Positions 5,834 through 58,627 of a stretch of DNA of 64,000 nucleotides are shown here, in pieces. The translations under genes were made by a program, and so were the position numbers. How positions within the stretch are numbered: the stretch's first letter is position 1; every line of letters starts with the position of its first letter. The notes below the pieces were generated by a model. That model was not told the DNA's origin, did no database searches, and saw nothing but the letters and a program-made list of their open reading frames with translations. Source of the DNA: Haliotis rubra (lineage: Eukaryota); assembly GCF_003918875.1 (NCBI RefSeq), contig NW_025766836.1, forward strand, positions 682,001-746,000, given 5' to 3'.

Positions 5834-6003
5834 ACTGACTGACTGACTGAGTTTGGTTTTACGCCGCTTTTAGCAATATTCCAGCAACATCACGGCGGGG
5901 GACACCAGAAATGGGCTTCACACATTGTGCCCATGTGGGGATTCGAACCCGGGTCTTCGGCGTGACGAGCCAACGCTTTAACCATTAGGCTACCCCACCG
6001 CCC
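5834..6003 (-). mobile_element. tRNA-derived SINE family A (about 170 bp). About 20 full or partial copies, including 8477-8630, 9258-9419, 10019-10154, 17356-17522, 22071-22235, 24494-24655, 26560-26700, 28976-29137, 31639-31811, 32681-32840, 40021-40158, 54428-54575, 63500-63667 and 63834-63992
   Basis: A box (tagcctaatggttaaagcg), B box (ggttcgaatccc), simple-repeat tail, 13-bp TSD ctcttttgtaatg. Confidence 0.9.
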
Positions 6004-6340
6004 CTCTTTTGTAATGTGTACATACGATTATTGAATGAGATCACCGCACTTAAATACTCACTGTGTGTGTTGTTTATCGCCCCAGTCAACATTATTCCAG
6101 CCTGTAAATAATCGATCCTGTCCCAGAATATCAAGTGATTGATGATGTCATGAGCAACGTCCCATGACGTCTGTGTATGATAATCTGATATAGTCCCACA
6201 ATTCAATACATTTTTAGTAGAATTTTATGACAAGCTCAGGATGTTGGGAATATAATGTTACTCGGATTTCAGAACGAAAGAGTTTGTATACAACTATGCA
6301 TTTTCCTGGAGTTTCATTTGATTCTGTTTCTTGGTTGCAG

Positions 6341-13612: not shown

Positions 13613-13879
13613 GAGGCCTTAGTGCAGGGAGATATAGTCAAAGGACGGTTAGTTGAAAGCCTTGCCATTTACACTGAAAAACAACATTAAATTTCAGGCT
13701 CCTGCAGTGATTAGAAGGAAGGAAGTTTCTGGAAGAAAACAAGCATCCCAAAACAGAGATATTTTTATTGAAACGGAACCATCATGCTCTGAACTTTGAC
13801 GAAGTATCAAAGCCATTGAAGGATTTTTTTATCGAGAAGAAGTTTACGTTATATCAAGTTTTGAAAACATTGACTTAAA

Positions 13880-15082
13880 ATGGTGTCAATGAAAGAGCTG
13901 TTCTGGCTATGCGGGGCTGCGGTTTTGTTTGTGACTGTTGCTGCTAATCCAACTTCAAAAGATGTTCAAAGTGTCCTCAACCTTCTACAGAATAAGGTTG
14001 ACCGTCGTCTTCGGCCAGTGTCAAACCAGTCTGAACCAGTTGATGTAACCTTGACCTTCCACATCCTCACAATCACCGGCTTTAATGAAGTGGAGCAGAA
14101 GTTGTCCTGTACGGGGTGGTTGGACATCTCATGGAAGGACGAGTTCATGACGTGGAACGAGACTGAATACAATGGCACCAGACAAGTCTATCCGCCCTCG
14201 GACTCGCACTGGCTTCCTTTCCTAGCTGTGGTCAATTCCTTTGAAGAGATGCGTCCACTAGGACAAAATATCATCATCACCAAAGCGTCTTCTGACGGCA
14301 TTATGCACTGGTATCCCGCGGACTCATTCATAACAGCCTGCACCGTCGACATCAGCAAGTACCCGTATGACACCCAGACATGTGAGATAGAATTCTTTCC
14401 TTGGGGGAGATCATCTGAAGATATCATTTTGAAGGTAGGGGAAGGTGTTCTCCTTTATAATTACCGTAAAAACGGGGAATGGGAACTGAAAAAGGTAGAT
14501 ATGTACCCGATGATGAAGTTTAACGGCAATGACTACATCTCTATGGTGTATGTCACCTTCGTCATCCAACGACGCCCTGCGTTCTTCATCCTGAACCTCA
14601 TCCTTCCCGTCCTCCTCCTGTCACTGCTCAACGTCCTCGTGTTCCTCCTACCGGCTGAGTCAGGGGAGAGGGTGTCCTATGCAATCACCGTGCTCTTGGC
14701 GCTGGCAGTGTTTCTAAGCTTCATCAGCGACAACATGCCGAAGACAGCGGAGTCACTGTCTGCACTGTCCGTCTACTTGACCACCATGTTCGTCATCAGT
14801 GCGGCCAGTGTGGCTGGGTCGATCTTGACACTCGTGCTCTACCACAGAGACCGGAAGAGACCGATTCCAACATGGCTGACTCGCCATATAAGCAGACGAC
14901 AGAGGAAGACGGCCCCCATTTCTGGAGCAGACGGTTCACAGAAGGAAGACTGCCAGTTTCCTAAAGGTAAACAGACAACCTGGGCTGATGTATCAATATA
15001 TATTGACAAAGTCTTCTTCTCAGTCTGTATGTTGGTGATTGTTCCCGCCACCACCTCACTCATGGTCCGTATATTTGTATGA
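13880..15082 (+). CDS. Intronless nicotinic acetylcholine receptor-like Cys-loop ligand-gated ion channel subunit (non-alpha type), 400 aa
   Basis: Signal peptide, RLRPV motif, W.P loop A, Cys-loop CTVDISKYPYDTQTC, NGEWEL, RRP-M1, LPAESGERVS M1-M2 linker, four TM helices. No vicinal CC in loop C. Confidence 0.95.
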   Translation: MVSMKELFWLCGAAVLFVTVAANPTSKDVQSVLNLLQNKVDRRLRPVSNQSEPVDVTLTFHILTITGFNEVEQKLSCTGWLDISWKDEFMTWNETEYNGTRQVYPPSDSHWLPFLAVVNSFEEMRPLGQNIIITKASSDGIMHWYPADSFITACTVDISKYPYDTQTCEIEFFPWGRSSEDIILKVGEGVLLYNYRKNGEWELKKVDMYPMMKFNGNDYISMVYVTFVIQRRPAFFILNLILPVLLLSLLNVLVFLLPAESGERVSYAITVLLALAVFLSFISDNMPKTAESLSALSVYLTTMFVISAASVAGSILTLVLYHRDRKRPIPTWLTRHISRRQRKTAPISGADGSQKEDCQFPKGKQTTWADVSIYIDKVFFSVCMLVIVPATTSLMVRIFV

Positions 15083-15506
15083 GGCAATGGATCGTATCAT
15101 TAAAGGACATTTGACCTCATGTTGTAGAGGACATTTCCAAATTTGACAAAAAACAATATGTCTGATCATTCAAGAATGACTATGGTCGACAGGCCAAAAC
15201 GTTGTATTTACAAGATTCATTATTTGCTGGAAATGTTGTGGTGCTCAAAAAATACCAATATGAATGAAAATAATTGCAAAGAACATTTTGTGTTCGTTTA
15301 AAAAAAATGGTAAATTTTACTTTTATTGCAAACATTCCCCAAATGATTTTTATTACGGTTACAACATTGAAAGCCTCAATAAAGATTTCAAATTTTTTAT
15401 AATTGATATGTGGCGGATATGTCCCAATCTGACATGTAACAAATATGTCTGATCGTACAATGGACTGCTTTAAACAAATATTTCTAATGATTTTGATGTC
15501 ACTTTT

Positions 15507-16095
15507 ATGTGTACGTCATGTAGCTTACATATATTTGTACGCCAAGTAGCACACGTATATTTGTACGCCAAGTAGCATACGCCATTTTTACGTCAGGTAT
15601 CAAGCGTTTACGTGTACGTCACGTAGCATACGTTTATTTGTACGTCATGTAGCATATGTATATTTGTACGTCATGTAGCATATGTATATTTGTACGTCAT
15701 GTAGCATACGTTTATATGTGTACGTCATGTAGCATACGTTTATCTGTACGTCATGTAACAAACGTTTATTTGTATGCTAGAAGCATACGTAAATTTGTAC
15801 GCCAAGTAGCATACGTATATTGGTACGTCATGTAGCATACGTTTATTTGTAGGCCAAGTAGCATACGTATATTGTACGCCAAGTAGCATACGTATATTGT
15901 ACGCCAAGTAGCATACGTATATGGGTACATCATGTAACATACGTTATTTTAACGTCATATATCAAACGTTGACGTGTACGACACGTAGCACACGTTTATT
16001 TGTAGGCCAAGTAGCATACGTATATTTGTACGTCAAATAGCATACGTATATTTGTACCCCAAGTAGCATACGTTTACTTGTACGTCATGTAGCAT
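15507..16095. repeat. Minisatellite, about 26-bp unit (tttgtacg[cc/tc]a[a/t]gtagcatacgtata)
   Basis: About 22 diverged tandem copies. Confidence 0.9.
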
Positions 16096-16995: not shown

Positions 16996-18691
16996 GGGTT
17001 TTTTGTCGCAATACAAGTGTGTGGGGCAGGGCGAACAGTTTACAGGGTGTCCGACCGAAGCTACCAGCGGAAACGGAGAAGTGAGGCTGACACTTGGGCA
17101 GTAGATGGTCTGGACTAGGTGGTTAGTGTCCGTCCCTCCTTGTACCTGGCTTACACTCCTGCTGGTCTGTCCACGCTCTGCCTCTATTTGCCCACTACCC
17201 CAGCTGTCCATGGCTTAACCTATCCTGTCGGTTATTAAAGGCGGATGAACGACTAACAATCAGTGATATAATGAAATGTACACTAACTCAGTATATTATG
17301 ATTTTGGAAATGATAATAACTATTCCGTGGTATGCCCTAGAGACAGCATATTTAGACTGACTGACTGAGTTTAGTTTTACGCCGCTTTTAGCAATATTCC
17401 AGCAATATCACGGCGGGGCACACCAGAAATGGGCTTAACACATTCTGCCCATGTGGGGATTCGAACCCGGGTCTTTGGCGTGACGAGCCAACGCTTTAAC
17501 CACTAGGCTACCCCACCGCCCCACATTCTTAGAAGATTGTATTTACCAAGTACATAATAATTGTATGTTAATAATTATGTATTCATTGCAAACTTGTCCA
17601 AAACTTATGATTTATATAATATAAAGCAAATGTAATCTTTGTCTTACACTGAATAAACAATACCTCTTGAGTTTCTTTAAAACGCACTAAATTACTAAAG
17701 GACAAAAACAAAGGAAACAGATGACGTCATACAAAGGGTGGAATGACGTCAGATGTCGGCGCAATTTAATTTTGGGCGCGAAGATCAATATCTGATGTGT
17801 GTACCATGTTGAGAGATACATGCACGGTATCTACACGGCACTCTGTTGATTAACTTGCAGATGGTACTGTCCGTCAAACGCGAAGAGCTAACCATATGTG
17901 TGCCATATTAACGGGTGCTGGGTCTCTGGCGTACGCTTTTTTAAAGAAAATACCACATAAAATCTATGAGGGATACAGCGAGGCAGTTCATTCGCCTACT
18001 TGTCGGAGAACAATCTGGCACAATGTGGTCTGATTGGTCATCAACTGAAATTTCCTGCCAACAATTCAAGCGAATGGTAAAACGACAGGGCGCACAATTG
18101 CAATTCTGGCTGCTTGAAGTCCATTCACAATAAAGGATTAGCTCGCCGTTCATGTGTGATACAGTTGATTTGTTTCTTGTTTAACGCCGCACTCAGCAAT
18201 ATTTTGGCTATAAGATCATAGTCAACAAGTATGACCCTCACTGCTAAGTCGCCAAAAAGGTTTTCTGTCACAGGACGCCTTGATTTCAGACGGACTACAT
18301 AATAGTCTAAACAGTATAGGTGTTACAGTTCGAATTCTCCATCAATAACGAGCAGATCAGAATCTTTTGCGAAGTGCAAATAATCTAATGAGACGATCTT
18401 GTCTAGGTGTTGTTTGCTTAGACCTGCCATTAGGGTGTCAGTTTTTACTGTACAGCAACGAGAACAGTCGGCGGGGCAGGTCACAGGCACTCTAGCACCT
18501 TTCGGGAACACTTGGTAGGGGAGTGGTGGGAGCAATGAGTCTCTGGCGGAAAGTCATGACAGAAACCTATGTGGTTTCATAAACTCAGTTCCCAATGATG
18601 ATTTGTCTAGGTTTTCCAGCGCCATACCCATGTTAGCGGGTTTCGCCAAATCGGTGTAAGACTAAACCATATTTACACAGACACACCGCGA

Positions 18692-19458: not shown

Positions 19459-20375
19459 TATTTAGGAAATAAAGTTCGCTCTACCCCAATGTGTTTTGTA
19501 ATAAAGTATAGTTTTGCCCTGAACTATTATAATTAAAGCACGAGGACGGTAGTCCGAGTGCTTTGATGTTATAATAGTTCAGGGCAAAACTATACTTTAT
19601 TACAAAACACACTGGGGTAGAGCGAACTTTACATCTTTTCTAAGATGCTAAATTTAATACTTTCTATGGATAATTACAATTAATTTAAGGCAGAAAATAA
19701 ATGACGGTGTCGGTAACCTAAATTAAGAATCCTCGCACAGGGCTAACTGGTGCGCTGTTCTATTGATGTGGCTGCCCCCCTATGTTAAGACGAACGTTAC
19801 CAGAAAAAAACAAATCATAACAGTTTGATGACGGTTTACGTTCGGATGAAATATCTTCTCTGAATTATTTTAATTACATCTGTCATTAGCGTAAACCATA
19901 TGGGGCAATATGAACGTCGCATTTCTACTACCAACGTAAGTTTAGATCAGTACATCCAGATGAAGCTGAGTAGTCAAGCGACATTCCACGATTGCATTGT
20001 GGGAATGTAAACATTGCGAACGTAACCGTGTTGCTGAAAACTTGTGAGTCGAATTGACACATTTTAACCGTCGTAAAACATAAACGTAATGTTTCCACCA
20101 GTGATGTTAGCTGCGTGAAGCAACTGCAAACCAAGAAACGGGATGCAACGGAGTAGTTTACTGAAGGAGGCCGTACGAGGCGATGACAACTGACATGCAT
20201 CGTGACGTCATTACATTGTGACGTAATGTAAAATGATTCGATTACGAGGGGGCACACTAGAATGGCGCAGTGACGGGAAAACGTCATTCAATTGTTACGT
20301 CATCAAAAAACTATACCTTTATTGTCTCATAATGTATTTATTTTTCGATTGTTCTAACCGCTAGGCATCTTAGAA
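19459..20375 (-). mobile_element. Same asymmetric-hairpin element, copy 2
   Basis: Reverse complement of 10926-11845 with few differences. Confidence 0.8.
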
Positions 20376-21416
20376 ATGGCTGTAATATTGCCGATGCGAT
20401 TTAAAATTTTTACTCACTCACTTACTGTAAATAATCGAGTATGGACCAGAGAATCCAGTTATCAACAGCATGAGCATCGATTTGCGCAATTGGGAACCGA
20501 TGACATATATGTCAACCAAGCCAGCGAGCCTGACCACCCGATCCCGTTAGTGGCCTCTTGCGACAAGCATAGTCGCCTTTTGTGGGAAGCATGGGTTGCT
20601 GAAGACCTATTCTACCCCAGTTCTTCACGGGTCACAGAGACCCAGGGGGTTCCAGGTAGGGAAATGGAGGCTCGGCAAGCTATGGCCGCCGTCAGGGACG
20701 ACTGAATGGATCTGGTGGTACGGCTTATATGATTGTTGCCTGGCCTCGTATCCCAACCGTGTGGATCGATGACCATGATAGAAATTGCTGAATTGTCGTA
20801 CAGACGCGATTATTTACAGACCGCTGTAAAATTGCTCGAATATTGCTAAGGGCTAACAAACAAAGAACTTACCATGTCCTATATTAGACTAAATGATTTT
20901 GTTATCAATTAGTGCGTCTCCGAAAGACAGATCTATAACCAGTATTGAAGGAACATAGCGTATGTACTGGAGAAGACAATAGCCCCGTCTTTCTTGATGG
21001 AGTGAGAGTGAAAATTAACTCTTTTCGTTTAAATATTTATAGACTCAATCTTCAATGTAGTATTAATTACATTTAGGTCCGTTTCAATTTCAAACCATTC
21101 TGGGAGGCTGGTGGTTCGACCCCTTTGAAGTAAGAAAAGAGTTATTGACTCGAGCCAACGCTCTCCGACTGAGAGGAAGATGTCCATGTCGTGTGTCCTT
21201 GCTGATTATGTATCATTAATATCCCAACGTCATGGCTGATGAGACAATGACAACATGCCTACTTTGCCTGTTTATATGTACAATCGCCCAGACGTCTTCT
21301 CAGCTTGCTCATCATATCCACCATTGGTGCACCGTCAATCCAGATCAAGATGAGACAAGGACAACATGCCTACTTCGCCTGTTTATGTTTATGTACAATC
21401 GTCAATACGTCATGGT

Positions 21417-21763
21417 GGCCGCCTCCTTGGTGTAGTGGTTAGAGCGTCCCCCCGGAGAGTGGAAGGTCGCAGGTTCGATCCCCGACCGCGTCATACCAAA
21501 AGACGTTAGAATTTGGTACTTGTTGGTCCCTGTCTGGCGCTCGGCATTAATGGGTACAACAAGGACTGGTCGGCTCGGAGTCAGTATAATGTGTCTGAGT
21601 GGGGTATTCATGCTTAACTGCGGCATGGTATCTCAGTGAGCTAGCACTATAAAACCAGCTTCAGTCTGGGGTAGTACAAGCAGCCGCACATACACATACA
21701 CATGCATGCACGCGGTCATATCAGCGAAATATTCTCAAGCACGACTTTTACCTCACCTCACCT
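21417..21763 (+). mobile_element. tRNA-derived SINE family B (about 345 bp, Meta/MESC-like core). Other copies at 27377-27646(-), 31032-31350(+), 43333-43749(-) and 49599-49950(-)
   Basis: A/B boxes, core gtcataccaaaagacgtt...ccctg.ctggcgctcggcattaa, (cacct)n tail, 14-bp TSD tcaatacgtcatgg. Confidence 0.88.
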
Positions 21764-21925
21764 CAATACGTCATGGCAGCTTGCTCATCATATCCACCAT
21801 TGGTGCACGTCAATCCAGATCAAGATGAGACAAGGACAACATGCCTACTCCGCCTGTTTATATGTACAACCGTCAATACAAATACAAACACCAGGAGAAT
21901 GCGAGTACACGTCAGTTGATCATGG

Positions 21926-22026
21926 CTAAGTACACATGGTGCACTTGCCTTGCGACAACACGCAATAATCTTTGCATGCGTCACACACGTTCCTCGTGCT
22001 GCACTTGACGCACCCTGGGGCACAGC
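21926..22026 (-). CDS. R-spondin-like furin-repeat protein, exon 4 (145 aa total, 16 Cys)
   Basis: ttttgtgtttgcag acceptor (phase 1). Encodes GCAPGCVKCSTRNVCDACKDYCVLSQGKCTMCT*, a furin-like repeat. Confidence 0.75.
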
Positions 22027-22595
22027 CTGCAAACACAAAAAACATAGGTACAGAAGCTCACCCTTATAGTGAGAGTGGGTGAGTGTGGTTATGCGCCGCT
22101 TTTAGCAATATTCCAGCAATATCACGGCGTGGGACACCTGAAATGGGCTTCACATATTGTACCCATATGGGGAATCGAACCCGGGTCTTCGGCGTGACGA
22201 GTGGACGCTTTTACCACAAGGCTAACCAACGACCCTTGACCCTTATATGTGTTGGTTTGGTGGTGTTATCGCCGCGGCATAGCAATATTCTAGCTATGTG
22301 ACGATGGTTTATAAACAATTAACTGACTATGAATGCGCGTGTGCGTGTGCGTATGCGTGTGTGTCCGTCCGTGCGTATATCCATTTGTGTTTGTGTCCGT
22401 CTGTCCGTCTGTGTATCTGTCTCTCCGTATGCCTCCAAGTGTTTGTGGCTGTGATTGATGCGAAATATATCGGTGTCATATAAAACTGTTTCTTCCAATA
22501 GCAAAACAACAAATATTCGGAGGGAATGAGCTTCATGTTTCCTTCACCTAACATTCAGATATGATATTGGGGGCTAAGAAGATGTGAGTCCTGAC

Positions 22596-22684
22596 CTGCG
22601 CAGAGAAGCTCCCCTTCTTCCGTGTGCCTGTACCAGCCATCTGGACACAGGGGACCCTTAGTGCAGTAGTACTCGGGCTCCGTC
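22596..22684 (-). CDS. R-spondin-like furin-repeat protein, exon 3
   Basis: ctgttgttccctggcag acceptor (phase 2), GCA G|GTCAG donor. Encodes TEPEYYCTKGPLCPDGWYRHTEEGELLCA. Confidence 0.7.
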
Positions 22685-23095
22685 CTGCCAGGGAACAACA
22701 GTAGTGGTAGATATATCTGCTCCTTGCTCGAGTGACTTGAGAGCGCACACGCACACGCGCACACGCGCACACTCACACATTGTATTGTGGACAGTAGATA
22801 TATAGCCTTCACACTTTGTACCCACACAGGATACCCGTTTAGTTCGGGTTAGAATTGATCTTCAGCAACCCATGTGTGTCGTAAAAGGCGACAAACGGGG
22901 TCTGGTGGTCAGGCTTGCTGAGTTGGTTAACGCATGTCGTTGTATTCCAGTTGTCGATGCTCATGCTGTCGATTTCTGGATTGTCTGATCCAGATTCGAT
23001 TATTGACAGACAGCCGTCATAATTATAGCTGGATTTCTGCTGAGTGAGGCGTTAAACAACAAACAAAGGAGTAGAATTCAGCTGCGTTTACTTAC

Positions 23096-23288
23096 ACACT
23101 CTGAGAGACCAGAACCATCACACCTTTATAATCCTGCATGCCGAAGGAGAAACCAGAAGACCGGTTGAAGTGCTTGGGGTTAAAGATGCGCACATATCCG
23201 TCTGCGCACTGGTTACATCCTTGGTTACCGAACGTCTGGACCACGTGACACGGGTGAATACAGTGGTCCACTTCTTTGGGACATGGTG
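23096..23288 (-). CDS. R-spondin-like furin-repeat protein, exon 2
   Basis: gtgtttag acceptor, GT|GTAAGT donor. Open frame APCPKEVDHCIHPCHVVQTFGNQGCNQCADGYVRIFNPKHFNRSSGFSFGMQDYKGVMVLVSQS. Confidence 0.7.
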
Positions 23289-24334
23289 CTAAACACGATG
23301 AGAATAGTTATAGACGAATAGAAATGTAACTGACTTTGAAAATCAGTTCTTGGTGTCCGTTTACATAAATATGGCATTTGGTGTCAATGTATTGAACTTG
23401 TCTTGTTGGTTGTGTAAAGCCGCGCTCTGCAGTAGTCCAGCGGTATGACGGTTGTTTTTAAATAATCGAGTCTGGACCAGACAACCCAGTGATCAACAGC
23501 ATGAGCATCGAAAACAGACTCAGTTGGGAAACGATGACATGCATCAACTATCAAACGAGTCCCATCGATCCTGTATGTCGCCTCGTACGATTGGCATGGG
23601 TTGCGGGGCGTGAAGATCTTGGTTAGAATCGGTCTTCTGTAACCCATGCTTGTCGTAAGAGGCGACAGACAGGATCGATAGGACTAACGGGATCGGCTGG
23701 TTGACACATGTCATCGTATCCCAACTTTATAAATCTATGTTCATGCTGTTGGTGACTGGAGGGCCTTGTCAAGACTCGATTATTTACAGTCTTCGGCGTA
23801 AACAACAAACAAACATGGGATGCTTTAGACAGTTCTCATCCGGATCTTAACGGGGAAACTAGAATTGGGTTGCAGAAGAACAGCTCAACCAGGGTCTTCA
23901 CCAGTTACAACCATGAGTTGCTGAAAACCGGTTCTAATCCAGATCTTCACGAGGGACAACCATGACTTTCAGAAGACCGGTTCTAACCCGAATCTTCTTG
24001 GTGGGGACGTTTGTAATATCCGACTCGTCGTAATATACAAGGGAATTCCGGGTTTAGAATAGTTTCTAGTGACATGTTGGACATACTATTTCTGCGTGAA
24101 TCAAATACAAAACAATAAATAAAGGGACCGATGTTTTCCTGTATTATAATATGCGATCTACATTCTATAAACGAGGGCGAGTCGGGGCGAGTATATCGGT
24201 ATAAAATTAGGGTAAGAGTACAGACATGCGTGAGCCTGTAATAGAATATATACATCGAACTGAATCTTAAATATTTGATTTAAGAAACGTTACGTGTAAG
24301 TCGTCGGAAACAAGATAGTGCTTGCGTGTCTTAC

Positions 24335-24389
24335 CTTGTCCATGAACAGCTATGGTAAAGCCGACAATAAAGACAAAAGTCAAAATCAT
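24335..24389 (-). CDS. Secreted two-furin-repeat (R-spondin-like) protein, exon 1 (signal peptide MILTFVFIVGFTIAVHGQ)
   Basis: Hydrophobic signal with VHG-Q cleavage site. CAA G|GTAAG phase-1 donor. Confidence 0.7.
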
Positions 24390-24827
24390 TGCTGACTTTT
24401 TGGAACAATTAGACCATGAGCTTGTGACGAGGAGGGTCGAGAAGAGGACCCATGCTGTCAGCAAATATATTTCAAATTATCGACGTCATATATCGAGCGA
24501 GTTTGGTTTTACGCCGCTTTTAGCAATATTCCAGCAACATCACGGCGGGGGACACAAGAAATGGGCTTCACACATTGTACCCATGTGGGGAATCGAACCC
24601 GGGTCTTCGGCGTGACGAGCCAACGCTTTACCCACTTGGCTACCCCACCGCCCCCGAACGTCATATATGCTTCTGTGTGGTTCATTAGATTAAATATATG
24701 GGATATTTGGTGTAACAGTCGCTGTCTGTCACTACAATTTTAAACAAAACCATATTGATCTTGTAATATATATTCATGTACAGTGAAACCCGGGTAACTC
24801 CAAGGAACCATGGCTAAAGTTGCTACT

Positions 24828-24991
24828 GACTGACTGAGTTTGGTTTTACGCCGCTTTTAGCAATATTCCAGCAACATCACGGCGGGGGACACCAGAAATG
24901 GGCTGCACACATTGTACCCATGTGGGTATTCGAACCCGGGTCTTTGGCGTGACGAGCCAACGCTTTGACCACTAGGCTACCCCACCGCCCC
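24828..24991 (-). mobile_element. SINE family A copy
   Basis: 12-bp TSD aaagttgctact. Confidence 0.9.
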
Positions 24992-25511
24992 AAAGTTGCT
25001 ACTTATCGGTATTGCCACCTATCCATCCAAGCAAGTTGTATCACATTTCCAAGTAAAGTACATCTGGGAATTTGGTGATGGGCAAAACAGTGTTTGTGTA
25101 TTGTTTAACGCCGATATAACTGTTTAACAGAATGGGAATAATAACGTCGGAGCCAGACAAGCCAGTGGCTGATATTATGAGCAATACATATACATATATA
25201 CATGCAATCGGTGGATGTCACCGAAACTGTCCACGTGCTCAGTTAGTCGCGTCTTAGGACCAGCAGAGCTTTCTGGGGACCATTTCTAACCCGGAATCTC
25301 CACTGGATGCAAACTGGCACTGGCAGAGGTTCTATAATTTTCAGGAATCTGGAATCCTTATTCAAAGATCCTTTGCAATTAAAGAACATAGATGTATTTG
25401 GAGGTAGTGCATTTAAGACAATTAAATCAAGCAGTCTTTAATTTCTTTATATCATTCACAGCAAATCGCAGATGTCCATGTGCTGCTTAAATCCCACAGC
25501 GCAAATTAGAT

Positions 25512-25829
25512 GGACCACGTTCCTCAAAGCGATCGTAGCGCTGAGATGATCGTAACTCCCATAGACTTACGACTGTCGTAGCGCTACGATCGCCCTGAGG
25601 AACTAGGCCCTGGGTCTAGATTTTTGAAGCTCTCGTGGCGCTAAGATAGTCGTAAGTTACTGTTAATGTATGGCACTTACGACTATCTTAGCGCTAACAG
25701 AGCTTTGAAAATCTAGCCCAGAGCCTAGATTTTCGAAGCTCTCTTAGCGCTAAGATAGTCGTAAGTGCCATACCTTAACATTAACTTACGACTATCCTAG
25801 CGCTAAGAGAGCTTCGAAAATCTAGGCCC
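25512..25829. mobile_element. Three tandem about 100-bp palindromic Harbinger-like mini-MITEs
   Basis: Each unit is a hairpin built on tagcgctaagatagtcgtaag-like arms, with CTG/CAG junctions. Related remnant at about 63757-63830. Confidence 0.75.
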
Positions 25830-27724
25830 TGGTTCGGTAGCCTAGTGGTCGATCCAGATGTACATCGGGTTGCGACATACAGAGCAGTGACTGATTGAGT
25901 GAGTTTGGTTTCTCGTCGCTTTTCAACAGTATACAACAGTGAGACACCTGAAATGAGCCTCACAAATCTCAGTGTGACGAGCCAAAACTCTATCCACTGG
26001 GCCACCGTACTAGCAAACGAAGCCCCGATGAGGAAATACGGTAATCGCTCGGTTTAATGAGTTTTGTTTTTAAAACTGAACAAAAGGCCAGTGGGTGGAC
26101 TCCAGCCTGTAAATAGGCAAGGGTTTTCTTCCAAACAGATTTTGATGGTTTGCTATTTCAATTTTAACGCTGCATTACCATGACATCGAGCCTGACCACC
26201 TGATTCATTTAGTGGTCTCTTCCGACAATTCCCACCGGATACAATGACCTACACCAATGTCAGCTGATAGGATAACACACAGTACGATATCACTACATGT
26301 ATCCAGATCCCAACCATTTCATCCGAATATTGCAGAACTACAAAAGCAACCAGTATGCTTGTCACACACATCTAGAGCCTCAAGGTGAGTTCTGTCTTGT
26401 GAGATAAGAACACTGGGTCAGACATGGTAGCGGAATTTCTGGGATCGCGTGATTAACATGGCTGCTAAACATATTTTCCTGTTTGCTTGAAGTATTCTGG
26501 CAGCAGTCTTAAAGCTATATGGCAACTACCTTTAAGTAATCTGGGTCAGACAACCCACTAGCTTTGAGCAATATTCCAGCAATATCAGGGCAGGGGGATA
26601 CCAGAAATGGGTTTCACACATTGTACCCATGTGTGGAATCGAACCCGGGCCTTAGCCGTATGGAGCAAACGCTTTAACCACTAGGCTACCTCACCGACCC
26701 TGTACATATTAAAAGGTCCACAAAGACTTTTAAAACAGCACTCAGCAGCATTAAATATTCAAGTTTTTACTCTCAAATCGCTGAAATCATTAGATGCTCT
26801 GGCTCTCAGCCTGTGGTCATAGACTACTAACATACTGTTCTCAATAAAGCTGGTGACATCATATTGCTTCAGCTTCCTTAACACTGATTATACCTTTTTT
26901 CAACGTTTTCATTATTTAAATGGAAATGACGAAATATACAACAACCTTCTTGAAACTCAGACTTACACATTCTCTGTCCCTCATGCATGAATACTCAAGT
27001 CCCTTCCCACTTCACTTTTGTTTATGTTTTAACAAGAGGTGAAATGGATTTCAGCTCGGTATATGAGATATTATCATTTTGCAGAAAATTGACAAGAGCT
27101 AAACCTTACAGAAATGCATATATTTTGACAAATAGAAAAGGTTAAGAAAATGATGGTACAAAAACCGAAAATACCTAATTTTTTTATTGCATTAGGGTAT
27201 ACTGAACCGAAGGCAAAATACTGCGGTTCTACTAATACTGCGGTATACCATTTCGCCCCTCTTTTTAAGGCTGTACTCAGCAGTATTCCAGCTATATGGC
27301 AGATGTCTGTAAATAATCGAGTCTGGACCAGACAATCTAGTGACTGACATCATGGGCATCGTTCTACCCATATGGGTGAGGTGAGGTGAAATTGGGTTTT
27401 ACGTCGTGCTTGAGAATATTTCACTCATATGTGTATGTGTATGTGCGGTTGCTTGTACTAGCCCAGACTTAAGCTGGTTTTATAGTGCTAGCCCACTGAG
27501 ATACCATGCCGCGGTGAAGCATAAATACCCCACTCAGACACATTATACTGACTCCGAGCCGACCAGTCCTTGTACCCATTAATGCCGAGCGCCAGGCAGG
27601 AACCAACAAGTACCATATTTTAACGGGTTTTTTGTATGACGCGGTCTACGCATATGGGATAGGATGACATGTGTCAACAAAGTCAGCATGTCTGACCACC
27701 CAATCCTGTTAATCACCTCTTACA

Positions 27725-28070: not shown

Positions 28071-29467
28071 CTCTTACAACAAGCATGGGTTGTTGAAGAC
28101 CAATTTTAATCAGGATCTGTACGGGTCTATCTGATCAGAGAGAAGCAGCTGTGTACTTCTTCTCGGGTCTAAATACCAAAGACATAAACTGTTGTGAAAA
28201 TAGTTATTTAATCACCCAGTAATTGTAAAATCACAAAAGCATGTAAACAAAGTATATCTGGAATATATGAGTATCTACACTGCAAATGTTAAAACTCTGA
28301 ACACACAAAAGAGCATCTTGTTAAAAAAACATCTGACAAATAATATATGTAAAATGTGTCACATATTTTTAGTCGACATATATATTTGTGACCAACATTC
28401 TTCTTACATTATTTCTACAGATCAAGACATTCACAGTAATAGAAATCAAGTAATAATAATCATATACATTATCATGACCTTAACGGATGTGCCAAGACAT
28501 CTCATACTAATTTTCGAGATGCTGAATTATACTCAAATACAAAATAAACTTACTTATCAAACTACTACTAAATTCACATAAAACAATTCACATTCCCTTC
28601 ACCATGTACAAATTCATAGGTCCACTTTTAATAATCCCACTCTTCGAGTCACACTCTCGAATGTCTTTTTAGACTCCCTTGGAAGTATACTCCCTAAAGT
28701 TCCTTATTTGGCTTTAAAAGGTTTCAAGTCACAACAAAATCTCATCATATTATCATCATGTTGAGAACTTTCACATCTCGCTAACTCCTTTCATTGTCTT
28801 TCATCAATTTGAGATGAAGATAAACCAAGTGTGCCCTATTTGTTTGTTTGTAGCTTGATGTAAGGTATGTACGAGAACGTAGGACCACATCTTTCAAAGT
28901 ATGTTTAGCCTACAATAGTTTAGTTACCCCTTGTATATTGGTGAATTACTTTGGATTGCTAAAATTACATAAATCAGTGAGTGAGTTTAGTTTTATACCA
29001 CTTTTAGCAAGTTTCCAACAATAACGCTCCCGGGGACACCAGAAATGGGCTTCACACAATGTACCCATGTGGGGAATTGAACATGGGTCTTCGGCATGGC
29101 GGGCAAATGCTTTAACCACTAGGCTACCCTCCAGCCCACGTTATCGGGGCGTTTCAAACACTGTACAACTACACTGGAACTTGTTCCTGCAGTCACGCAC
29201 ACATTTAACAGAAAGAGGTTATTTGTTACCAAACAATTATTGAAAAAGAGACAGAACAGATTCTGCTCTTTAGACAAAATATGCAACATATTCTATTGTC
29301 ATGATCATGTTCATTCTTTCCTTTTGACTAAACAAAAGAAAAATCTAGTTCTAACAAAATTTGATCTACTGAAGTTTAGATGTTTGGATGCAGTAATCAT
29401 AAAGTGTTCTGATAAGAGTGTTCATAGTCTGCTTCCACATGTTTTGTTGTGACGTGTTACAGGCTTG

Positions 29468-29569
29468 TCAACCTCGTGGCTTTTTCACTGGGGGTTGTTT
29501 CTCCTTCTCAGTTCCAAGAACAGCAGTGTCTATCTGCCACAAGTCAATATTCTTGGCCTTGATAGCATT
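29468..29569 (-). CDS. TRIAP1: TRIAP1 exon 2 (81 aa total)
   Basis: ttgttcaccag acceptor. NAIKAKNIDLWQIDTAVLGTEKEKQPPVKKPRG* matches the 'AIK.K.I......LG..KE' C-terminus. Confidence 0.9.
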   Translation of the reverse strand, partial: NAIKAKNIDLWQIDTAVLGTEKEKQPPVKKPRG

Positions 29570-30131
29570 CTGGTGAACAAAACAGAAAATAACATCATGA
29601 AACAAACACGTCATACTCAGGTATATAGACACATCTTATGTTCTCTCATTAAATAATAAAAAGTGGCAACAATCTGCAAACACTATTTCTGTACTGGCTG
29701 CTAACTGAAGTAATATGATGGCGGGCTGTAAATATTTGACCACAGACCAGATAATTCAATAATTGATTTCACAGGCATTGACCCATGCAATTAAGATTCA
29801 ATTCAATCAACCAAGCCATGAGGCTAGATCACTTGATTCATTTAGGTTGCTCTGGTCCAATATTCTTACCCAGAATCCCGCCAGGTGTGAAATTGTAAAA
29901 TTCTGATAATTTCATAAAGGGGAGATAACTCTTTATCATTTCAACAAACACAGATGCCAACCTCACAGATGTGTAATTTTTAGAGAATGTTGATTTCAAA
30001 CTCATATGTGAGATAAAAGCTGTAAGATGGCATCATTTCCAGAACAAACACTCCATAGAAAATGGACAGGGAAAGAAACCTTTCAAAATTTCCCACTAGA
30101 CCACAGGACCAGTGAGTGGACAATAATTAGT

Positions 30132-30485
30132 CAGGGATTTACCTTTAGTCCTGTATTTGAGGGCCCCTGGGACTCATACTCTTAATTTTCAGGGGTCCTG
30201 GACAACAAAATTGGGGTCCAGATACTTTATTATTATCATTAATACTGTTATTGTATTGTGTATCATGATCATCACTTAATTATTACAGTAAATAAATTGC
30301 GTATGATACCATAACTCAGCTAGTAGCAAACTCAGTGATAACTTATTGTTAGTTGATTGGAATTTTTACAAAAAGTATTTGGACTTTTACTGCATCCCTG
30401 TGGATGCGCTAATAAATTTTGTTGCATCCATTGTCGATTTTTATGTGTATAGCACGCACAGGAATTCGCGTCCTGTAAATCCCTG
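30132..30485. mobile_element. hAT-like MITE nested in another hAT-like remnant
   Basis: cagggatttac ... gtaaatccctg, flanked by attagt. Confidence 0.6.
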
Positions 30486-31031
30486 ATTAGTGGTCCTGTC
30501 TGTAATTCACTGGTCCAAAGTAACATTCGTAGATTTACTTAACTATCAGTACAAAATTCACTGGCCACCAGGACCACTACAAACTTATCATTTTGCGGTC
30601 CTGATGAAATTTTACCAGCCAGGGACCACAGGACCAGCATACATTTCGCACACTGAATGGATCCATGGTCATAAAAGCACGGAGAGGTAAGACACTTGAT
30701 TATTGAGGATGCAGCCAACTGTAATAGTACACACCCTTTTACCAGCAGTGTTTGTCTGCAGCAGTCATCAAGTGTGCTTGTGCTATATGACAACAACCAG
30801 TAAATAATTGAGTCTGGACCAGACATTGATTGATATTGTAAGCAATGATCCACTTCATTCAGGCACAATGGCATCCATTGCAATTAGCCAAATCACTGAA
30901 GCCATAGCTCTTGATTCAGTTGGTTGCCTCTTAAAACCAGCATCAATTTGGGACCAAATGATTCATCAGTGTTACAGCTAGGTATTAGTGTTACCATCCT
31001 CTATATCCCTACAGCTCTCATTTGATTAAGA

Positions 31032-31350
31032 ACCGCTTCCGTGGTGTAGTGGTTAGAGCGTCCGCCCGGAGAGCGGAAGGTCACGGGTTCGATCCCCGAC
31101 CGCGTCATACCAAAAGACATTAAAATATGGTACTTGTTGGTCCCTGCCTGGCGTTCGGCATTAATGGGTACAATAAGGACTGGTCGGCTCGGAGTCAGTA
31201 TAATGTGTCTGAGTGGGGTATTCATGCTATAAAACCAGCTTAAGTCAGGGCTAGTACAAGCAGCTGCACATACACATACACACACATGCACGTCGTCATA
31301 TGAGCGAAATGATCTCAAGCACGACGTAAAACACAATTTCACCTCACCTC
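31032..31350 (+). mobile_element. SINE family B copy in the TRIAP1 intron
   Basis: TSD ctcat[t/c]tgattaa. Confidence 0.88.
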
Positions 31351-33186
31351 ATCTGATTAACCCGTGGTTATCACAGCTGTTAGCAGTTACCTGCCCTTTG
31401 TTTGGGGAACTAAAGAATCAGCATTGACATCTCGTAACTCACAGGGGCAACTTTTTTCAGTGAAAAGCTTTTGTTTTGCAATTGAGAGCTATCATCAGAA
31501 ATGTTTTAATAAGGGCCTACATACTAATTGACCTGGTGCCAATTCAACCCAGGAAGAGACACTGTAATTAACTGTGTCGTTAGCTACAGCTGTGAACTAC
31601 CTCAGTAATCATCAACTGTTGGAGTGGAATACATCATGCGAGTGAGTGAGTGAGTGAGTTGGGTTTTACGCCGCTTTTAGCAATATTCCAGCAATATCAT
31701 GGTAGGGGACACCAGAAATGGGCTTCACACATTGTACCCATGAGGGGAATCAAACATGGGCCTTCAGCGTTATGAGCAAACGCTTTAACCACTAGGCCAC
31801 CCCACCGCCCTCAGTGTGCTAGACATAAATCAAGTTTGTTTAAGCCTGCTCTCCTTTTGACAAGGGTTTAAAGGCTTGTTAATGGCTTGTTATTCTGATA
31901 AAGCTGGGTTTTATTGGACACAAAATAATGTGACCTATAAAACATATTAAGAATGAATGCAAATAAGTTCAATGCAATTCCTGGGTGATGCAAAAATTTG
32001 GTTGTTCATTAACACTGACCATAAATGTAAAGTGCATGTTTAACATTAACATGCATGGCATGTCTCCTCTGGTAGGAAATACTCTGTGGTTAGAATATAA
32101 ACAGTTAATACCCTCAATCAAACATTCAAACCTCCATCTAAACTAAGGGATCATTCATAATTCATGGCTAGGGGGGTGATGATGATTTTGAAGGGGGGGT
32201 CACCCATTTTGTTCTGGGGAGGTAGGGGGTTATACATTTTGTACACATGTTGTGAGGGGTGGGTGGGGTTCAGCAATTTTGCACATAGTATATATGAAAA
32301 AAATATGCTTAAACATTATGGTGGGAAAGGAGGGGATGGGTCATTGATTTTGTACATGACATGAGGGGGGGGGGAGATTGTACATTTGGGGGGCATTCCC
32401 ATTGTACATGCTTCTCCATAAAAATCATTATCACTCCCCATAGCCATAAATTATGAATGGTCCCCAAGTCTCTGACCATAGGTGAGGTGTCACTTTCCAC
32501 ACTATTTCTCTGTATCAGATGGTGACACATATTAACACAGTGCAACACGACATATTTAGCCAGGGGTAATATCAAAAACAGGTACAAAGGAAACATAGTT
32601 ATATAAGCACCATTCTAAGGTGTTGGTTGTACTACCAGGAACCATATATAGGATTATATTATCATATGCTCTCTGGTTGATGAGTGAGTGAGTTTAGTTT
32701 TTGGCCGCTTTTAGCAATATTCCAGCAATATCAAGGCAGGGGACGCCAGAAATGGGCTTCATACATTGTATCCATGTGGGAAATCGAACCTGGGTCTTTG
32801 GCACACAAACACTTTAACCACTTGGCTACCCCACCACCTCCTTCTGGTCGATGAATCATTACAGTATTTATGTAATGATTACAGTAAATAAACTAGCTGA
32901 AGTAAAATTTGTAACAAATCAGGCTTCATCAGAGGACACAGAACCTGATGCAAGACAGTAATTTCTGTAATCGTCCATAAAGGTGACCTGGGCGTGTTAG
33001 TTACTTCTAACCATGCTAATACCTTAGCAACTGGTGGAGGAGCCTGTCTACCTGTTGAGCCTTTCACAGCTCTCGGCTAATCCCAATTACTTTTCTGCAT
33101 AAATACGGCTAATTAGCCCAACTGATTGACTTGTGTGAGCCTGTTATCCGGTGATAAAGGATTTAGAATAAACATGATTGTTTTCA

Positions 33187-33372
<186 letters not shown>

Positions 33373-33410
33373 TCATCAGTCGCCACACGTTTACCCCCGC
33401 AGTGCAAAAA

Positions 33411-33423
33411 GGAAGTGACGTCA
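33411..33423. promoter_or_regulatory. Overlapping ETS-CRE motif in the TRIAP1/GATC bidirectional promoter
   Basis: GGAAGTGACGTCA, 50 bp upstream of the TRIAP1 ATG. Confidence 0.5.
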
Positions 33424-34008
33424 GAGCAGAATGTGGATTTCCCCTTCTATTTTAAAACATAAACACGCCGGGCGTCAATCCGTTGATGGCTGTCTGCCGA
33501 ACTACGCTCATTTAGCATCGACTGTATGGGCACAATATGCAAAATATTACAGTTTGACGTTGAAACTTCTGTGACGTACAGCTTCTAGTTCTTAACATTT
33601 CGGCAATGAAGACTGGTACCCTGTCTTTCGCCTCCTTGCGGTCGCTTACTGTGGCGAGGAGCGCAACCGCTTGAGGTCAAGAAAATCAATCTAAACATCT
33701 TCCTTGTTTATGTTACAACTTCCTGTAAAATAGTTATTGATATATTTTAATGCATTTGTGATTGATTTTTTAATTATTAAGATTGATTGCAAATGTCACA
33801 TTCCCTTTATTGTATTTAATTAAATGAAAGTAACTTATCATTTGTTTGAGTCCCAGTAAGCTGGGCCCCGTCTCACATATCGCAAGGTGGGCGCGCGCAA
33901 AGCGAGCCGGGAACCAGCTTACAGGGAACCATCACTATATTGTGCAGAGTTGTCTGCTCTTGACGAGACTGGAAAGGAAGAAGGTGGGAGAATAATAATA
34001 CATTGACC

Positions 34009-37196: not shown

Positions 37197-37360
37197 GGGG
37201 CTGTGGGGTAGCCTAGTGGTTAAAGCGTTCGCTCGTCTTGCAGAAGACCCGGGTTCGATTCCCAAGATGGGTACAATGTGTGAAGCCCATTTCTGGTGTC
37301 CCCGTCGTGATATTGCTGGAATATTGCTAAAAGCGGCGTAAAACCCAACTCACTCACTCA
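37197..37360 (+). mobile_element. SINE family A copy in GATC intron 3
   Basis: A/B boxes, cttttgta TSD. Confidence 0.9.
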
Positions 37361-58462: not shown

Positions 58463-58627
58463 CTGAGTGAGTGAGTTTAGTTTTACGCCGCCTTTAGCAA
58501 TATTCCAGTAATATCACGGCGGGGGATACCAGAAAAAGGCTTCACACATTGTGCCCATGTTGGAAATCGAACCCGGGTCTTCGGCGTGACGAGCGAACGC
58601 TTTAACCACTAGGCTACCCCACCGCCC
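58463..58627 (-). mobile_element. SINE family A copy
   Basis: ctgcacac TSD. Confidence 0.9.

What the first reader, a model, noticed from the sequence alone, without database searches (positions are those of the whole stretch)
21926..24389. Hidden 4-exon gene for a secreted R-spondin-like protein (two furin repeats, no TSP1 domain)
Seen: four exons with canonical GT-AG sites and compatible phases (1,2,1) splice into an intact 145-aa ORF that the ORF track misses: MILTFVFIVGFTIAVHGQ-APCPKEVDHCIHPCHVVQTFGNQGCNQCADGYVRIFNPKHFNRSSGFSFGMQDYKGVMVLVSQSVTEPEYYCTKGPLCPDGWYRHTEEGELLCA-GCAPGCVKCSTRNVCDACKDYCVLSQGKCTMCT. It has a signal peptide and 16 Cys. Established: the R-spondin Fu1-Fu2 module reads C..C..C...NGC..C...(hairpin)...C...CP.GY(F/Y)......C..C....C..C.S.NFC..CK....L..G.C; Fu1 binds ZNRF3/RNF43 and Fu2 binds LGR4-6. 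This protein follows that pattern (NQGCNQC, CPDGWY, CSTRNVCDACK...LSQGKC), with a much longer Fu1 hairpin and without the two Fu2 phenylalanines. As I recall, RSPO2 also has a phase-1 intron at the NRCA|RC junction; here it falls at LLCA|GC. Inference: a minimal R-spondin-related Wnt modulator in a protostome, where R-spondins are poorly documented, or a lineage-specific secreted furin-repeat peptide.
Basis: partly seen in the sequence, partly recalled or inferred. Interest (0 to 1): 0.85.

Follow-up and report, generated by a model that had tools for sequence, protein, structure and literature searches.

The report
Abalone secreted furin-repeat protein, not R-spondin
The four-exon gene is real and conserved, but RefSeq already lists it as an uncharacterized abalone protein; it is a small secreted cysteine-rich protein whose back half resembles the furin repeats of R-spondin, and it lacks everything else that makes an R-spondin.

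Summary
The four minus-strand exons (24389-24335, 23288-23096, 22684-22596, 22026-21926) splice through GT-AG introns, phases 1, 2, 1, into a 145-aa protein with a signal peptide and 16 Cys.

The gene is not hidden. The window is Haliotis rubra, and the protein is letter for letter XP_046572780.1, "uncharacterized protein LOC124280841". Syntenic orthologs with the same exon plan exist in H. asinina and H. cracherodii. dN/dS is 0.10-0.18 at dS 0.39-0.72, and all 16 Cys are invariant. A distant unnamed taxon carries two tandem paralogs whose two mapped introns share position and phase.

The furin-repeat reading is half supported. A family profile of exons 3-4 finds only R-spondin-1/2 in the PDB at E up to 0.011 (best 6e-7). 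Cys-fixed shuffles never reach that score. Pfam Furin-like_2 is the only family touched, and it stays below threshold.

R-spondin membership fails:
- There is no TSP1 domain and no basic tail.
- The Fu1 R..Q hairpin is missing, and the Fu2 Phe clamp reads S122/V126.
- The exon-2 half does not align.
- The family is no closer to true mollusc RSPO4 proteins, which keep all these features.

No RNA evidence could be obtained, and the AlphaFold models were poor. Verdict: a lineage-restricted divergent furin-repeat protein of unknown partner, of modest interest.

The parts
24335..24389 (-). Exon 1: start codon (24389-24387) and signal peptide MILTFVFIVGFTIAVHG|Q; donor GTAAGA; ends in phase 1
   Evidence: Hydrophobic N-terminus with mean Kyte-Doolittle 2.8-1.8 over the first windows; V at -3 and G at -1. 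The same exon is in H. asinina (55 nt) and H. cracherodii (58 nt).
23289..24334 (-). Intron 1 (1046 nt, GT..AG)
   Evidence: The intron is 1448 nt in H. asinina and 2400 nt in H. cracherodii, while the exons keep their size.
23096..23288 (-). Exon 2: residues 19-83, the front part of repeat 1. It holds C21, C28, C32, the GC43-x2-C46-ADGYVRIF core, a conserved N-x-S sequon at N60 and most of a 43-residue insert. Ends in phase 2.
   Evidence: This is the piece that found the orthologs and distant homologs. It gave no PDB or Pfam match on its own.
22685..23095 (-). Intron 2 (411 nt, GT..AG), with repeat-derived sequence
   Evidence: very high contig depth at 22768-23109.
22596..22684 (-). Exon 3: residues 84-112, TEPEYYC90-x5-C96-PDGWY-...-C111, the back part of repeat 1. 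Ends in phase 1.
   Evidence: It aligns with RSPO1 'SCPPGYFDARNPDMNKC' in the profile searches.
22027..22595 (-). Intron 3 (569 nt, GT..AG), containing a tRNA-like SINE copy (about 22081-22224) and microsatellites
21926..22026 (-). Exon 4: residues 113-145 plus stop (21928-21926). This is truncated repeat 2: C114-x3-C118-x2-C121-x5-C127-x2-C130-x10-C141-x2-C144, with an extra C134.
   Evidence: The best PDB matches are R-spondin-1/2 furin repeats. Pfam Furin-like_2 is sub-threshold over residues 94-142.

Best explanation
This is a genuine, expressed-type protein-coding gene of the blacklip abalone Haliotis rubra, RefSeq LOC124280841, annotated as uncharacterized. It encodes a 127-residue mature, secreted, probably N-glycosylated protein held together by up to eight disulfides. 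Its architecture is one complete eight-Cys furin-like (FU) repeat, whose central beta-hairpin is expanded to 43 residues, followed by a FU repeat cut short after its seventh Cys position. It belongs to a small lineage-restricted family, seen in three Haliotis species and in two tandem copies in one unnamed distant taxon. The family is a divergent member of the furin-repeat / growth-factor-receptor cysteine-rich superfamily. R-spondin is its closest solved relative, but it is not an R-spondin. By inference only, it most likely works as a rigid disulfide-laddered extracellular binding module that engages an unknown soluble or membrane partner through its hairpin loops. Those loops hold the few fast-changing residues. 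It does not use the R-spondin interfaces for ZNRF3/RNF43 or LGR4-6.
For: Shown:
- The exon model, GT-AG sites and intact ORF.
- Identity to XP_046572780.1, and the window is 100% identical to the H. rubra assembly over 13.4 kb.
- Syntenic orthologs beside the same intronless Neur_chan gene, with the same exon sizes while intron lengths vary 2- to 7-fold.
- dN/dS of 0.10-0.18 at dS 0.39-0.72, with 16 of 16 Cys invariant.
- Distant homologs on contig L002 whose exon 2-3 and exon 3-4 introns have the same position and phase, and a conserved N-x-S sequon.
- FU affinity: the profile of exons 3+4 finds 13 PDB sequences at E 6.3e-7 to 0.011, all R-spondin-1/2.
- A local family HMM scores 30.9 bits against RSPO1 Fu1-Fu2, and 0 of 3000 Cys-position-preserving shuffles reach that score.
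- The Cys spacing from C96 to C144 matches RSPO1 C79 to C129 within one residue per gap (and the alignments).
- Pfam Furin-like_2 is the only family touched.
- ESM Atlas look-alikes carry VSP, Furin-like_2 or GF_recep_IV.
Inferred: secretion, glycosylation, disulfide pairing and the binding role.
Against: - No RNA evidence. Both run searches returned only DNA-type contig runs, and the contigs cover introns as well as exons.
- No spliced transcript assembly carries the protein.
- No AATAAA or ATTAAA signal lies within 1.5 kb downstream of the stop.
- The fold is not confirmed. AlphaFold2 gave pLDDT 41.8 for the full protein and 49.6 for the C-terminal half, and Foldseek found nothing.
- All Pfam matches are below the gathering score.
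- The N-terminal half matches no known domain except a short GC-x2-C-x2-GY core.
- HMMER E-values on Cys-rich sequence are optimistic (bias 4-14 bits).
- Nothing tested here bears on function.
Confidence: 0.72

Rival explanations
1. It is a truncated R-spondin derivative. A vetigastropod duplicate of the ancestral RSPO4-type gene lost its TSP1 domain and basic tail and still modulates Wnt signalling, for example by engaging ZNRF3/RNF43 or an LGR through remodelled surfaces.
For: R-spondin-1/2 are the only PDB sequences the family profile finds at E up to 0.011. There are 16 Cys, as in Fu1-Fu2. The spacing from C96 to C144 is nearly that of RSPO1. Introns fall at the signal peptide/repeat 1 and repeat 1/repeat 2 boundaries, as in the one-exon-per-domain RSPO4 gene (PMC3532313). 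The Fu1-Fu2 fragment alone is reported to be sufficient for beta-catenin stabilisation by RSPO4 (same paper).
Against: True mollusc RSPO4 proteins keep R-x-x-[MI]-R-Q-x-G in Fu1, CF...[FY]C in Fu2, TSP1 and the basic tail, and this family has none of them. The family HMM is no closer to mollusc RSPO4 (24.4-29.8 bits) than to human RSPO1 (30.9 bits). A reverse RSPO HMM gives only 10-20 bits and aligns only the C-terminal half. The PDB holds no PCSK5-, FRAS1- or VSP-type FU proteins, so the exclusivity of the R-spondin hits says little. There is an extra phase-2 intron inside repeat 1.
Confidence: 0.07
2. It is a lineage-specific cysteine-rich effector, such as an antimicrobial or immune peptide, a shell-matrix or mucus component or a protease inhibitor. 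On this view its likeness to furin repeats is convergence of Cys spacing rather than common descent.
For: The family is tiny: a search of 1.84 billion representatives with exon 2 found only Haliotis plus two unnamed sources. No curated domain reaches threshold. The listed differences from a closely related genome (about 96% identical in introns) are all amino-acid changing and fall at a few sites (51, 54, 61, 63, 129, 131, 138), which is typical of surface-variable effectors. Abalone are known for orphan secreted Cys-rich proteins (my own knowledge).
Against: The similarity goes beyond the Cys positions, because shuffling all non-Cys residues never reaches the real score (0/3000 and 0/1000, z about 6-7). 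Conserved non-Cys motifs match FU repeats: CP-x-G-[WY]-[YF], GC-x2-C and a polar x-N-x loop before the fourth Cys. Long-term dN/dS of 0.1-0.18 is low for arms-race effectors. An effector role and an FU fold are not mutually exclusive.
Confidence: 0.17
3. It is not a functional gene: an annotation artefact, or a decaying locus that merely stays open.
For: No transcript evidence was obtained. No canonical poly(A) signal lies nearby. A SINE sits 94 bp upstream of the ATG in this assembly. Exon 3 had no cover in the related genome's contigs.
Against: Three species keep the intact frame, all splice sites, all 16 Cys and strong purifying selection. A distant taxon keeps the same exon plan in two copies. 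The tool states that a gap in contig cover proves nothing.
Confidence: 0.03

Closest known systems
R-spondins (RSPO1-4), including the RSPO4-type genes of molluscs (Lottia XM_009062786.1, Crassostrea XM_011456573.3, Octopus XM_014917926.2)
   Same: Both are secreted, with 16 Cys after the signal peptide. Residues 90-144 are collinear with RSPO1 C75-C129, with near-identical Cys spacing, a CP-x-G-[YW]-[FY] motif and C-x2-C-x5-C-x2-C. R-spondin-1/2 are the only PDB sequences found at E up to 0.011 (best 6e-7). Introns lie at the signal-peptide and inter-repeat boundaries.
   Different: This protein has no TSP1 domain and no basic tail, and Fu2 is cut after its seventh Cys. The Fu2 Phe clamp reads S122/V126 instead of F/F(Y). 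The Fu1 hairpin with R..Q is replaced by a 43-residue stretch that does not align, and the first five Cys are spaced differently. There is an extra phase-2 intron. Pfam Furin-like_2 is far below threshold. The family is no closer to mollusc than to human RSPO.
Generic furin-like (FU) repeats: Pfam PF15913 Furin-like_2, PF03302 VSP, PF14843 GF_recep_IV (growth-factor-receptor cysteine-rich superfamily)
   Same: The core GC-x2-C-x2-G-[YF] and C-x2-C-x5-C-x2-C motifs are shared. Sub-threshold Pfam hits go to Furin-like_2 (Haliotis) and VSP (L002 paralogs). The nearest ESM Atlas clusters carry these families.
   Different: No hit reaches a gathering score. Repeat 1 has an unusually long hairpin carrying a conserved glycosylation sequon. 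There are only about 1.75 repeats, with no other domain and no membrane anchor.
Metagenomic repeat protein P0006 (ENA, 312 aa, unknown protist-like source)
   Same: It shares the motif x-GC-x2-C-x2-GY-x-R followed by a long hairpin, as in exon 2 (E 1.8e-4; 7-12 bits per repeat).
   Different: The match covers only about 20 residues per repeat. P0006 has a different Cys count per unit and no equivalent of exons 3-4. It is probably only the shared FU core.

Membership tests
R-spondin | Signal peptide followed by two furin-like repeats (Fu1, Fu2; 8+8 Cys) | tested here: inconclusive
   A signal peptide and 16 Cys are present. C90-C144 align collinearly with RSPO1 (E 6e-7). The first 65 mature residues do not align to the Fu1 N-terminal half. 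Repeat 2 lacks the eighth Cys and the CP-x-G turn.
R-spondin | Thrombospondin type-1 repeat after Fu2 | tested here: not met
   The stop codon follows C144-T145 directly in all three Haliotis orthologs. No W-x2-W or CS-x2-CG-x-G exon, and no other Cys-rich exon, lies anywhere in the 64-kb window.
R-spondin | Basic (Lys/Arg-rich) C-terminal tail | tested here: not met
   The protein ends ...GKCTMCT. The mature chain has 11 K+R against 12 D+E. Mollusc RSPO4 proteins have long KR tails.
R-spondin | Fu1 hairpin residues that contact ZNRF3/RNF43 (RSPO1 R66 and Q71; R-x-x-[MI]-R-Q-x-G in mollusc RSPO4) | tested here: not met
   The residue roles come from my knowledge of the RSPO1 complex structures. 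The motif is present in Lottia, Crassostrea and Octopus RSPO4. The abalone hairpin is 43 residues long and no HMM alignment covers it.
R-spondin | Fu2 phenylalanine clamp for LGR4-6 (RSPO1 F106, F110) | tested here: not met
   In the aligned loop C121-STRNV-C127 the positions are S122 and V126. The L002 paralogs have S/Q and T/N. Mollusc RSPO4 proteins keep F...F/Y.
R-spondin | Orthology: closer to the lineage's own RSPO than to other FU proteins | tested here: not met
   The family HMM scores Lottia 24.4, Crassostrea 24.8, Octopus 29.8 and human RSPO1 30.9 bits. The abalone's own RSPO gene could not be fetched, because that needed a long typed query. No tree against PCSK5 or FRAS1 repeats was possible.
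R-spondin | One exon per domain, with a phase-1 intron between Fu1 and Fu2 | tested here: inconclusive
   The abalone gene has a phase-1 intron between the repeats (LLCA|GC) and one after the signal peptide. RSPO4 has five exons for five domains (PMC3532313). The exact position and phase in RSPO genes were not checked, and the abalone gene has an extra phase-2 intron within repeat 1.
R-spondin | Potentiates Wnt/beta-catenin signalling by clearing ZNRF3/RNF43 via LGR4-6 | not testable with these tools
   This needs binding and reporter assays.
Furin-like (FU) repeat / growth-factor-receptor Cys-rich superfamily | Characteristic Cys spacing and motifs (C-x2-C-x3-4-C-x2-C-x5-C-x2-C; C-P-x-G-[YWF]-[YF]), with significant profile similarity to known FU repeats | tested here: met
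   The spacing was read directly. The profile search gives RSPO FU repeats at E 6e-7. No Cys-fixed shuffle reaches the real score, 0/3000 and 0/1000 for each of four RSPO targets.
Furin-like (FU) repeat / growth-factor-receptor Cys-rich superfamily | Reaches the curated Pfam threshold (PF15913, PF00757, PF14843 or PF03302) | tested here: not met
   Furin-like_2 scores 10.4 bits on the full protein and 14.7-16.1 bits on the C-terminal half, against a 28-bit cut-off. VSP scores 10-15 bits on L002 pieces against 31.4.
Furin-like (FU) repeat / growth-factor-receptor Cys-rich superfamily | Beta-hairpin ladder fold with 1-3, 2-4, 5-6, 7-8 disulfides | tested here: inconclusive
   AlphaFold2 gave pLDDT 41.8 and 49.6, with only short strands predicted. 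Foldseek against the PDB found no match. The alignment is only 7-8 rows deep.

The most novel reading that the evidence does not exclude
The family is a vetigastropod-specific, minimal R-spondin derivative: Fu1 with a remodelled, glycosylated hairpin plus a clipped Fu2, and no TSP1 or tail. It would tune Wnt receptor turnover independently of LGR, for instance as a ZNRF3/RNF43 ligand or decoy. That would be a natural example of the engineered 'Fu-only' R-spondin fragments.
Probability: 0.06. Interest if true: 0.7.

Novelty: new member of a known kind. Interest (0 to 1): 0.27.

Why it matters
In practical terms, an orphan RefSeq "uncharacterized protein" in three abalone genomes can now be described as a secreted, divergent furin-repeat protein under purifying selection, with a defined family and exon plan. 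It also shows that a pattern-based call of "R-spondin" is not enough. Molluscs have a bona fide RSPO4-type gene, and this protein lacks every R-spondin-specific determinant. If the small chance of a Wnt-related role held, it would be a natural minimal Fu-only ligand. Otherwise it is one more lineage-restricted cysteine-rich secreted protein, of interest mainly to abalone biology (development, shell, immunity).

Tried and rejected
- Pfam on the single exon pieces gave nothing useful; the only hit, Opy2 at E 0.05, is chance.
- PDB searches with exon 2, exon 3 or the full H. asinina ortholog as single sequences gave only chance matches: vicilin, PhnI, autolysin.
- Paralogs or further exons (TSP1, other Cys-rich) in the window: none found. 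The other Cys-dense ORFs are microsatellite translations.
- Rfam on 20000-26500 found nothing.
- RNA evidence: both run searches found only DNA-type contig runs of one coded organism. The single read-laying run showed contigs crossing intron and exon alike, and the listed joints are repeat artefacts, not splice junctions.
- Word-indexed homolog searches with the ortholog and with the family alignment found no new members.
- From the representative search, P0002, P0004 and P0005 are low-complexity or repeat artefacts and were set aside. P0006 shares only the GC-x2-C-x2-GY core.
- AlphaFold2 was run twice and Foldseek once. The models were too poor to use.
- Literature: no paper names the locus or its accessions, and the run and assembly accessions of the distant homologs appear in no paper, so their taxon stays unknown. 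L002 shares no nucleotide similarity with the window.
- Earlier scan notes held nothing on R-spondin in this genome.
- Left out: fetching the abalone's own RSPO gene with a full-length mollusc RSPO query, because that sequence has no reference and is too long to type. Only RSPO stretches of 103 residues or fewer, copied from tool or paper output, were used inside local scripts.
Full report
**1. The observation**

Reading 21800-24600 on the minus strand and splicing the four stated exons gives 55+193+89+101 = 438 nt.
- The donors are GTAAGA, GTAAGT and GTCAGG, and every acceptor ends in AG after a pyrimidine-rich tract.
- Intron phases are 1, 2, 1.
- The N-terminus is strongly hydrophobic, with V at -3 and G at -1 before Q18.
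- The 16 Cys lie at 21, 28, 32, 43, 46, 90, 96, 111, 114, 118, 121, 127, 130, 134, 141 and 144.
- Apart from microsatellite translations, exons 2 and 4 are among the few Cys-dense open segments in the whole 64-kb window. There is no paralog, TSP1-like exon or other similar exon.

**2. The gene is real, and it is already annotated**

A search of 1.84 billion representatives with exon 2 returned a 145-aa protein, P0001, 94% identical over the exon. Its 90% cluster holds three RefSeq proteins:
- XP_067670839.1 of Haliotis asinina;
- XP_071093155.1 of H. cracherodii;
- XP_046572780.1, "uncharacterized protein LOC124280841 [Haliotis rubra]", stored here as P0008.

P0008 is identical, residue for residue, to the spliced window protein. 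Its CDS span in assembly GCA_003918875.1 is 2464 nt, the same as the finding. That locus is 100% identical to the window over 13.4 kb. So the window is H. rubra, and the "hidden" gene is NCBI's own model.

Exact reconstruction of the three CDSs shows the same four exons in each species (55 or 58/193/89/101 nt) with GT-AG introns. Intron lengths differ 2- to 7-fold. In H. asinina and H. cracherodii the gene lies next to an intronless Neur_chan gene. That gene matches window 13858-15575 at 84-86%.

Nei-Gojobori estimates give dS 0.39-0.72 and dN 0.05-0.09. That is omega 0.14-0.18 for the whole CDS and 0.10-0.15 for the mature part. Fisher p is 6e-9 to 3e-13. All 16 mature Cys are invariant. This is a protein-coding gene under purifying selection.

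**3. A wider family**

Two further exon-2 hits come from unannotated DNA: P0003 (E 4e-7) and P0007 (E 8.5e-4). On the 12 kb fetched from an 82-kb ENA contig (L002) I found two tandem genes. Each has homologs of exons 2, 3 and 4 in order.

The only splice combinations that keep the frame and use good sites match the Haliotis intron positions and phases:
- a phase-2 intron after the V that precedes x-EP-x-[YW]-x-C;
- a phase-1 intron just before the first Cys of repeat 2.

Exon 1 and intron 1 were not located on L002.

Across the five sequences the conserved features are:
- C-P-x5-C;
- GC-x2-C-x-x-G-[YF];
- an N-x-S sequon (N60 in H. rubra), kept in four of the five spliced family sequences and in the exon-2 fragment P0007;
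- EP-x-[YW]-x-C-x2-G-x2-C-x-[DG]-G-[WF]-[YF];
- C-x3-C-x2-C-x5-6-C-x2-C.

In the L002 copies the last repeat runs on as C-x2-C-[RF]-[DT]-GFTL...C, a textbook furin-repeat hairpin. L002 shares no nucleotide similarity with the window, and its taxon could not be named. Word-indexed searches found no further members.

**4. What kind of protein it is**

Single sequences hit nothing curated at threshold.
- Pfam is empty for P0001.
- For P0008 the only family touched is PF15913 Furin-like_2, at 10.4 bits over residues 94-142.
- The C-terminal halves of P0008 and P0009 score 14.7 and 16.1 bits against a 28-bit cut-off.
- The L002 exon-4 pieces touch VSP at 10-15 bits.

Profiles see more.
- The exon-4 family profile finds R-spondin-1 at E 0.003.
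- The profile of exons 3+4 (A4, seven rows) finds 13 PDB sequences at E 6.3e-7 to 0.011. Every one is R-spondin-1 or -2, and the next hit has E 0.48.
- The alignment is collinear: LC96PDGWY...C111-x2-C114-x3-C118-x2-C121-STRNV-C127-x2-C130-...-GKC141 against RSPO1 SCPPGYF...C-x2-C-x4-C-x2-C-FSHNF-C-x2-C-...-GRC.

Because HMMER statistics are generous with Cys-rich sequence, I made an empirical null.
- A local HMM of the five spliced family members scores 30.9 bits against the RSPO1 Fu1-Fu2 stretch printed by the PDB tool.
- 3000 shuffles that keep every Cys in place have mean 0.6, sd 4.3 and maximum 20.9, and none reaches the real score.
- The same holds for RSPO4 of Lottia, Crassostrea and Octopus, at 0/1000 each.

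So the C-terminal half is related to furin repeats beyond mere Cys spacing. ESM Atlas look-alikes (0.86-0.89, leads only) carry VSP, Furin-like_2 or GF_recep_IV.

The N-terminal half (exon 2) has the right number and order of Cys for the front of a repeat, and it has the GC-x2-C-x2-GY core. The same core is the only thing it shares with the metagenomic repeat protein P0006. Its loops are expanded, with 43 residues between the fifth and sixth Cys against 18 in RSPO1. No alignment to Fu1 is recovered.

**5. Why it is not an R-spondin**

A 2025 survey (PMC12111769) reports RSPO4-type genes in Mollusca, Annelida and Brachiopoda. The Lottia, Crassostrea and Octopus sequences in its supplement keep:
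- both Fu repeats;
- the Fu1 hairpin R-x-x-[MI]-R-Q-x-G;
- the Fu2 C-F-x3-[FY]-C loop;
- a TSP1 repeat;
- a long basic tail.

The abalone protein stops three residues after the Cys that aligns with RSPO1 C125. It has no TSP1 exon downstream and no basic tail. It carries S122 and V126 where the Phe clamp should be. It has no alignable Fu1 hairpin.

Its profile is no closer to mollusc RSPO4 (24.4-29.8 bits) than to human RSPO1 (30.9 bits), which argues against a recent origin from the molluscan RSPO gene. A reverse RSPO HMM gives only 10-20 bits.

The exclusive R-spondin hits in the PDB are partly a property of that database. It has no PCSK5-, FRAS1- or VSP-type furin-repeat proteins, and R-spondin chains are short and consist purely of FU repeats.

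On gene structure, RSPO4 has one exon per domain (PMC3532313). Introns after the signal peptide and between the repeats are therefore shared in kind. That is common for shuffled extracellular modules, the abalone gene has an extra phase-2 intron, and I could not check the RSPO intron phase.

**6. What is missing**

No RNA evidence was obtained.
- Both run searches returned only runs of one coded organism, kept as contigs.
- Laid on the locus, the contigs cover introns and exons alike at about 96% identity. They are therefore DNA of a close relative or a divergent haplotype.
- The listed differences inside exons 2 and 4 are all amino-acid changing: V51L, F54Y, R61G, S63A, A129Q (one run only), K131Q, Q138G. 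None hits a Cys or makes a stop.
- The table is truncated, so no rate can be drawn from it. Several of these sites also vary among the three species, which hints at a few fast sites on an otherwise fixed scaffold.
- AlphaFold2 gave pLDDT 41.8 for the full protein and 49.6 for the C-terminal half, and Foldseek found nothing.

**7. Verdict**

The best reading is a lineage-restricted, secreted, probably glycosylated protein with 1.75 furin-like repeats and an unknown binding partner. It is a new, divergent member of a known superfamily, encoded by an already annotated locus, and its interest is modest.

Noticed in passing
window 24483-24657: A tRNA-like SINE of about 175 bp sits 94 bp upstream of the ATG. 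It is absent from the related genome's contigs, which join 24482 directly to 24658. It is therefore a recent or polymorphic insertion in the presumed promoter/5' region. Copies of the same SINE lie at about 22081-22224 (intron 3), 5849-6004, 17367-17522, 24836-24991, 31652-31810, 37197-37355, 58469-58628 and 63836-63990.
   Followed up: partly
window 21951-21979 and 23157-23193: All nine listed nucleotide differences between the window and the about 96%-identical contigs of 'organism A' inside exons 2 and 4 change the amino acid (7 residues). None is at a Cys. Several of these sites also vary among H. asinina, H. cracherodii and H. rubra. This suggests a few fast-evolving surface positions, but the differences table was truncated.
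   Followed up: partly
window 22426-22767: This stretch covers exon 3, the 5' end of intron 3 and the 3' end of intron 2. It had zero contig cover in both runs laid, next to a (GT)n-type microsatellite at 22738-22780 where reads seem cut. The tool warns that a hole proves nothing.
   Followed up: no
L002:6945-9515 and L002:10004-11563: Two tandem paralogs of the family lie on an ENA contig of an unnamed organism. Their exon 2-3 and exon 3-4 introns share position and phase with the Haliotis gene. Paralog A has an odd number of Cys (15) in the parts modelled.
   Followed up: partly
window 20400-21925: No AATAAA or ATTAAA signal lies on the minus strand within 1.5 kb downstream of the stop codon. 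The stretch 21400-21741 is highly repeated in the related genome.
   Followed up: no
window 13858-15575: An intronless Neur_chan_LBD/Neur_chan_memb gene is conserved next to the locus in H. asinina (398 aa) and H. cracherodii (373 aa), matching the window at 84-86%. It is the subject of another first-stage note (s1-329675).
   Followed up: no
window 28129-33636: This stretch matches, at about 80-89%, the H. asinina region that carries an 81-aa UPF0203 (PF05254) gene upstream of the locus. Gene order is therefore conserved on both sides.
   Followed up: no
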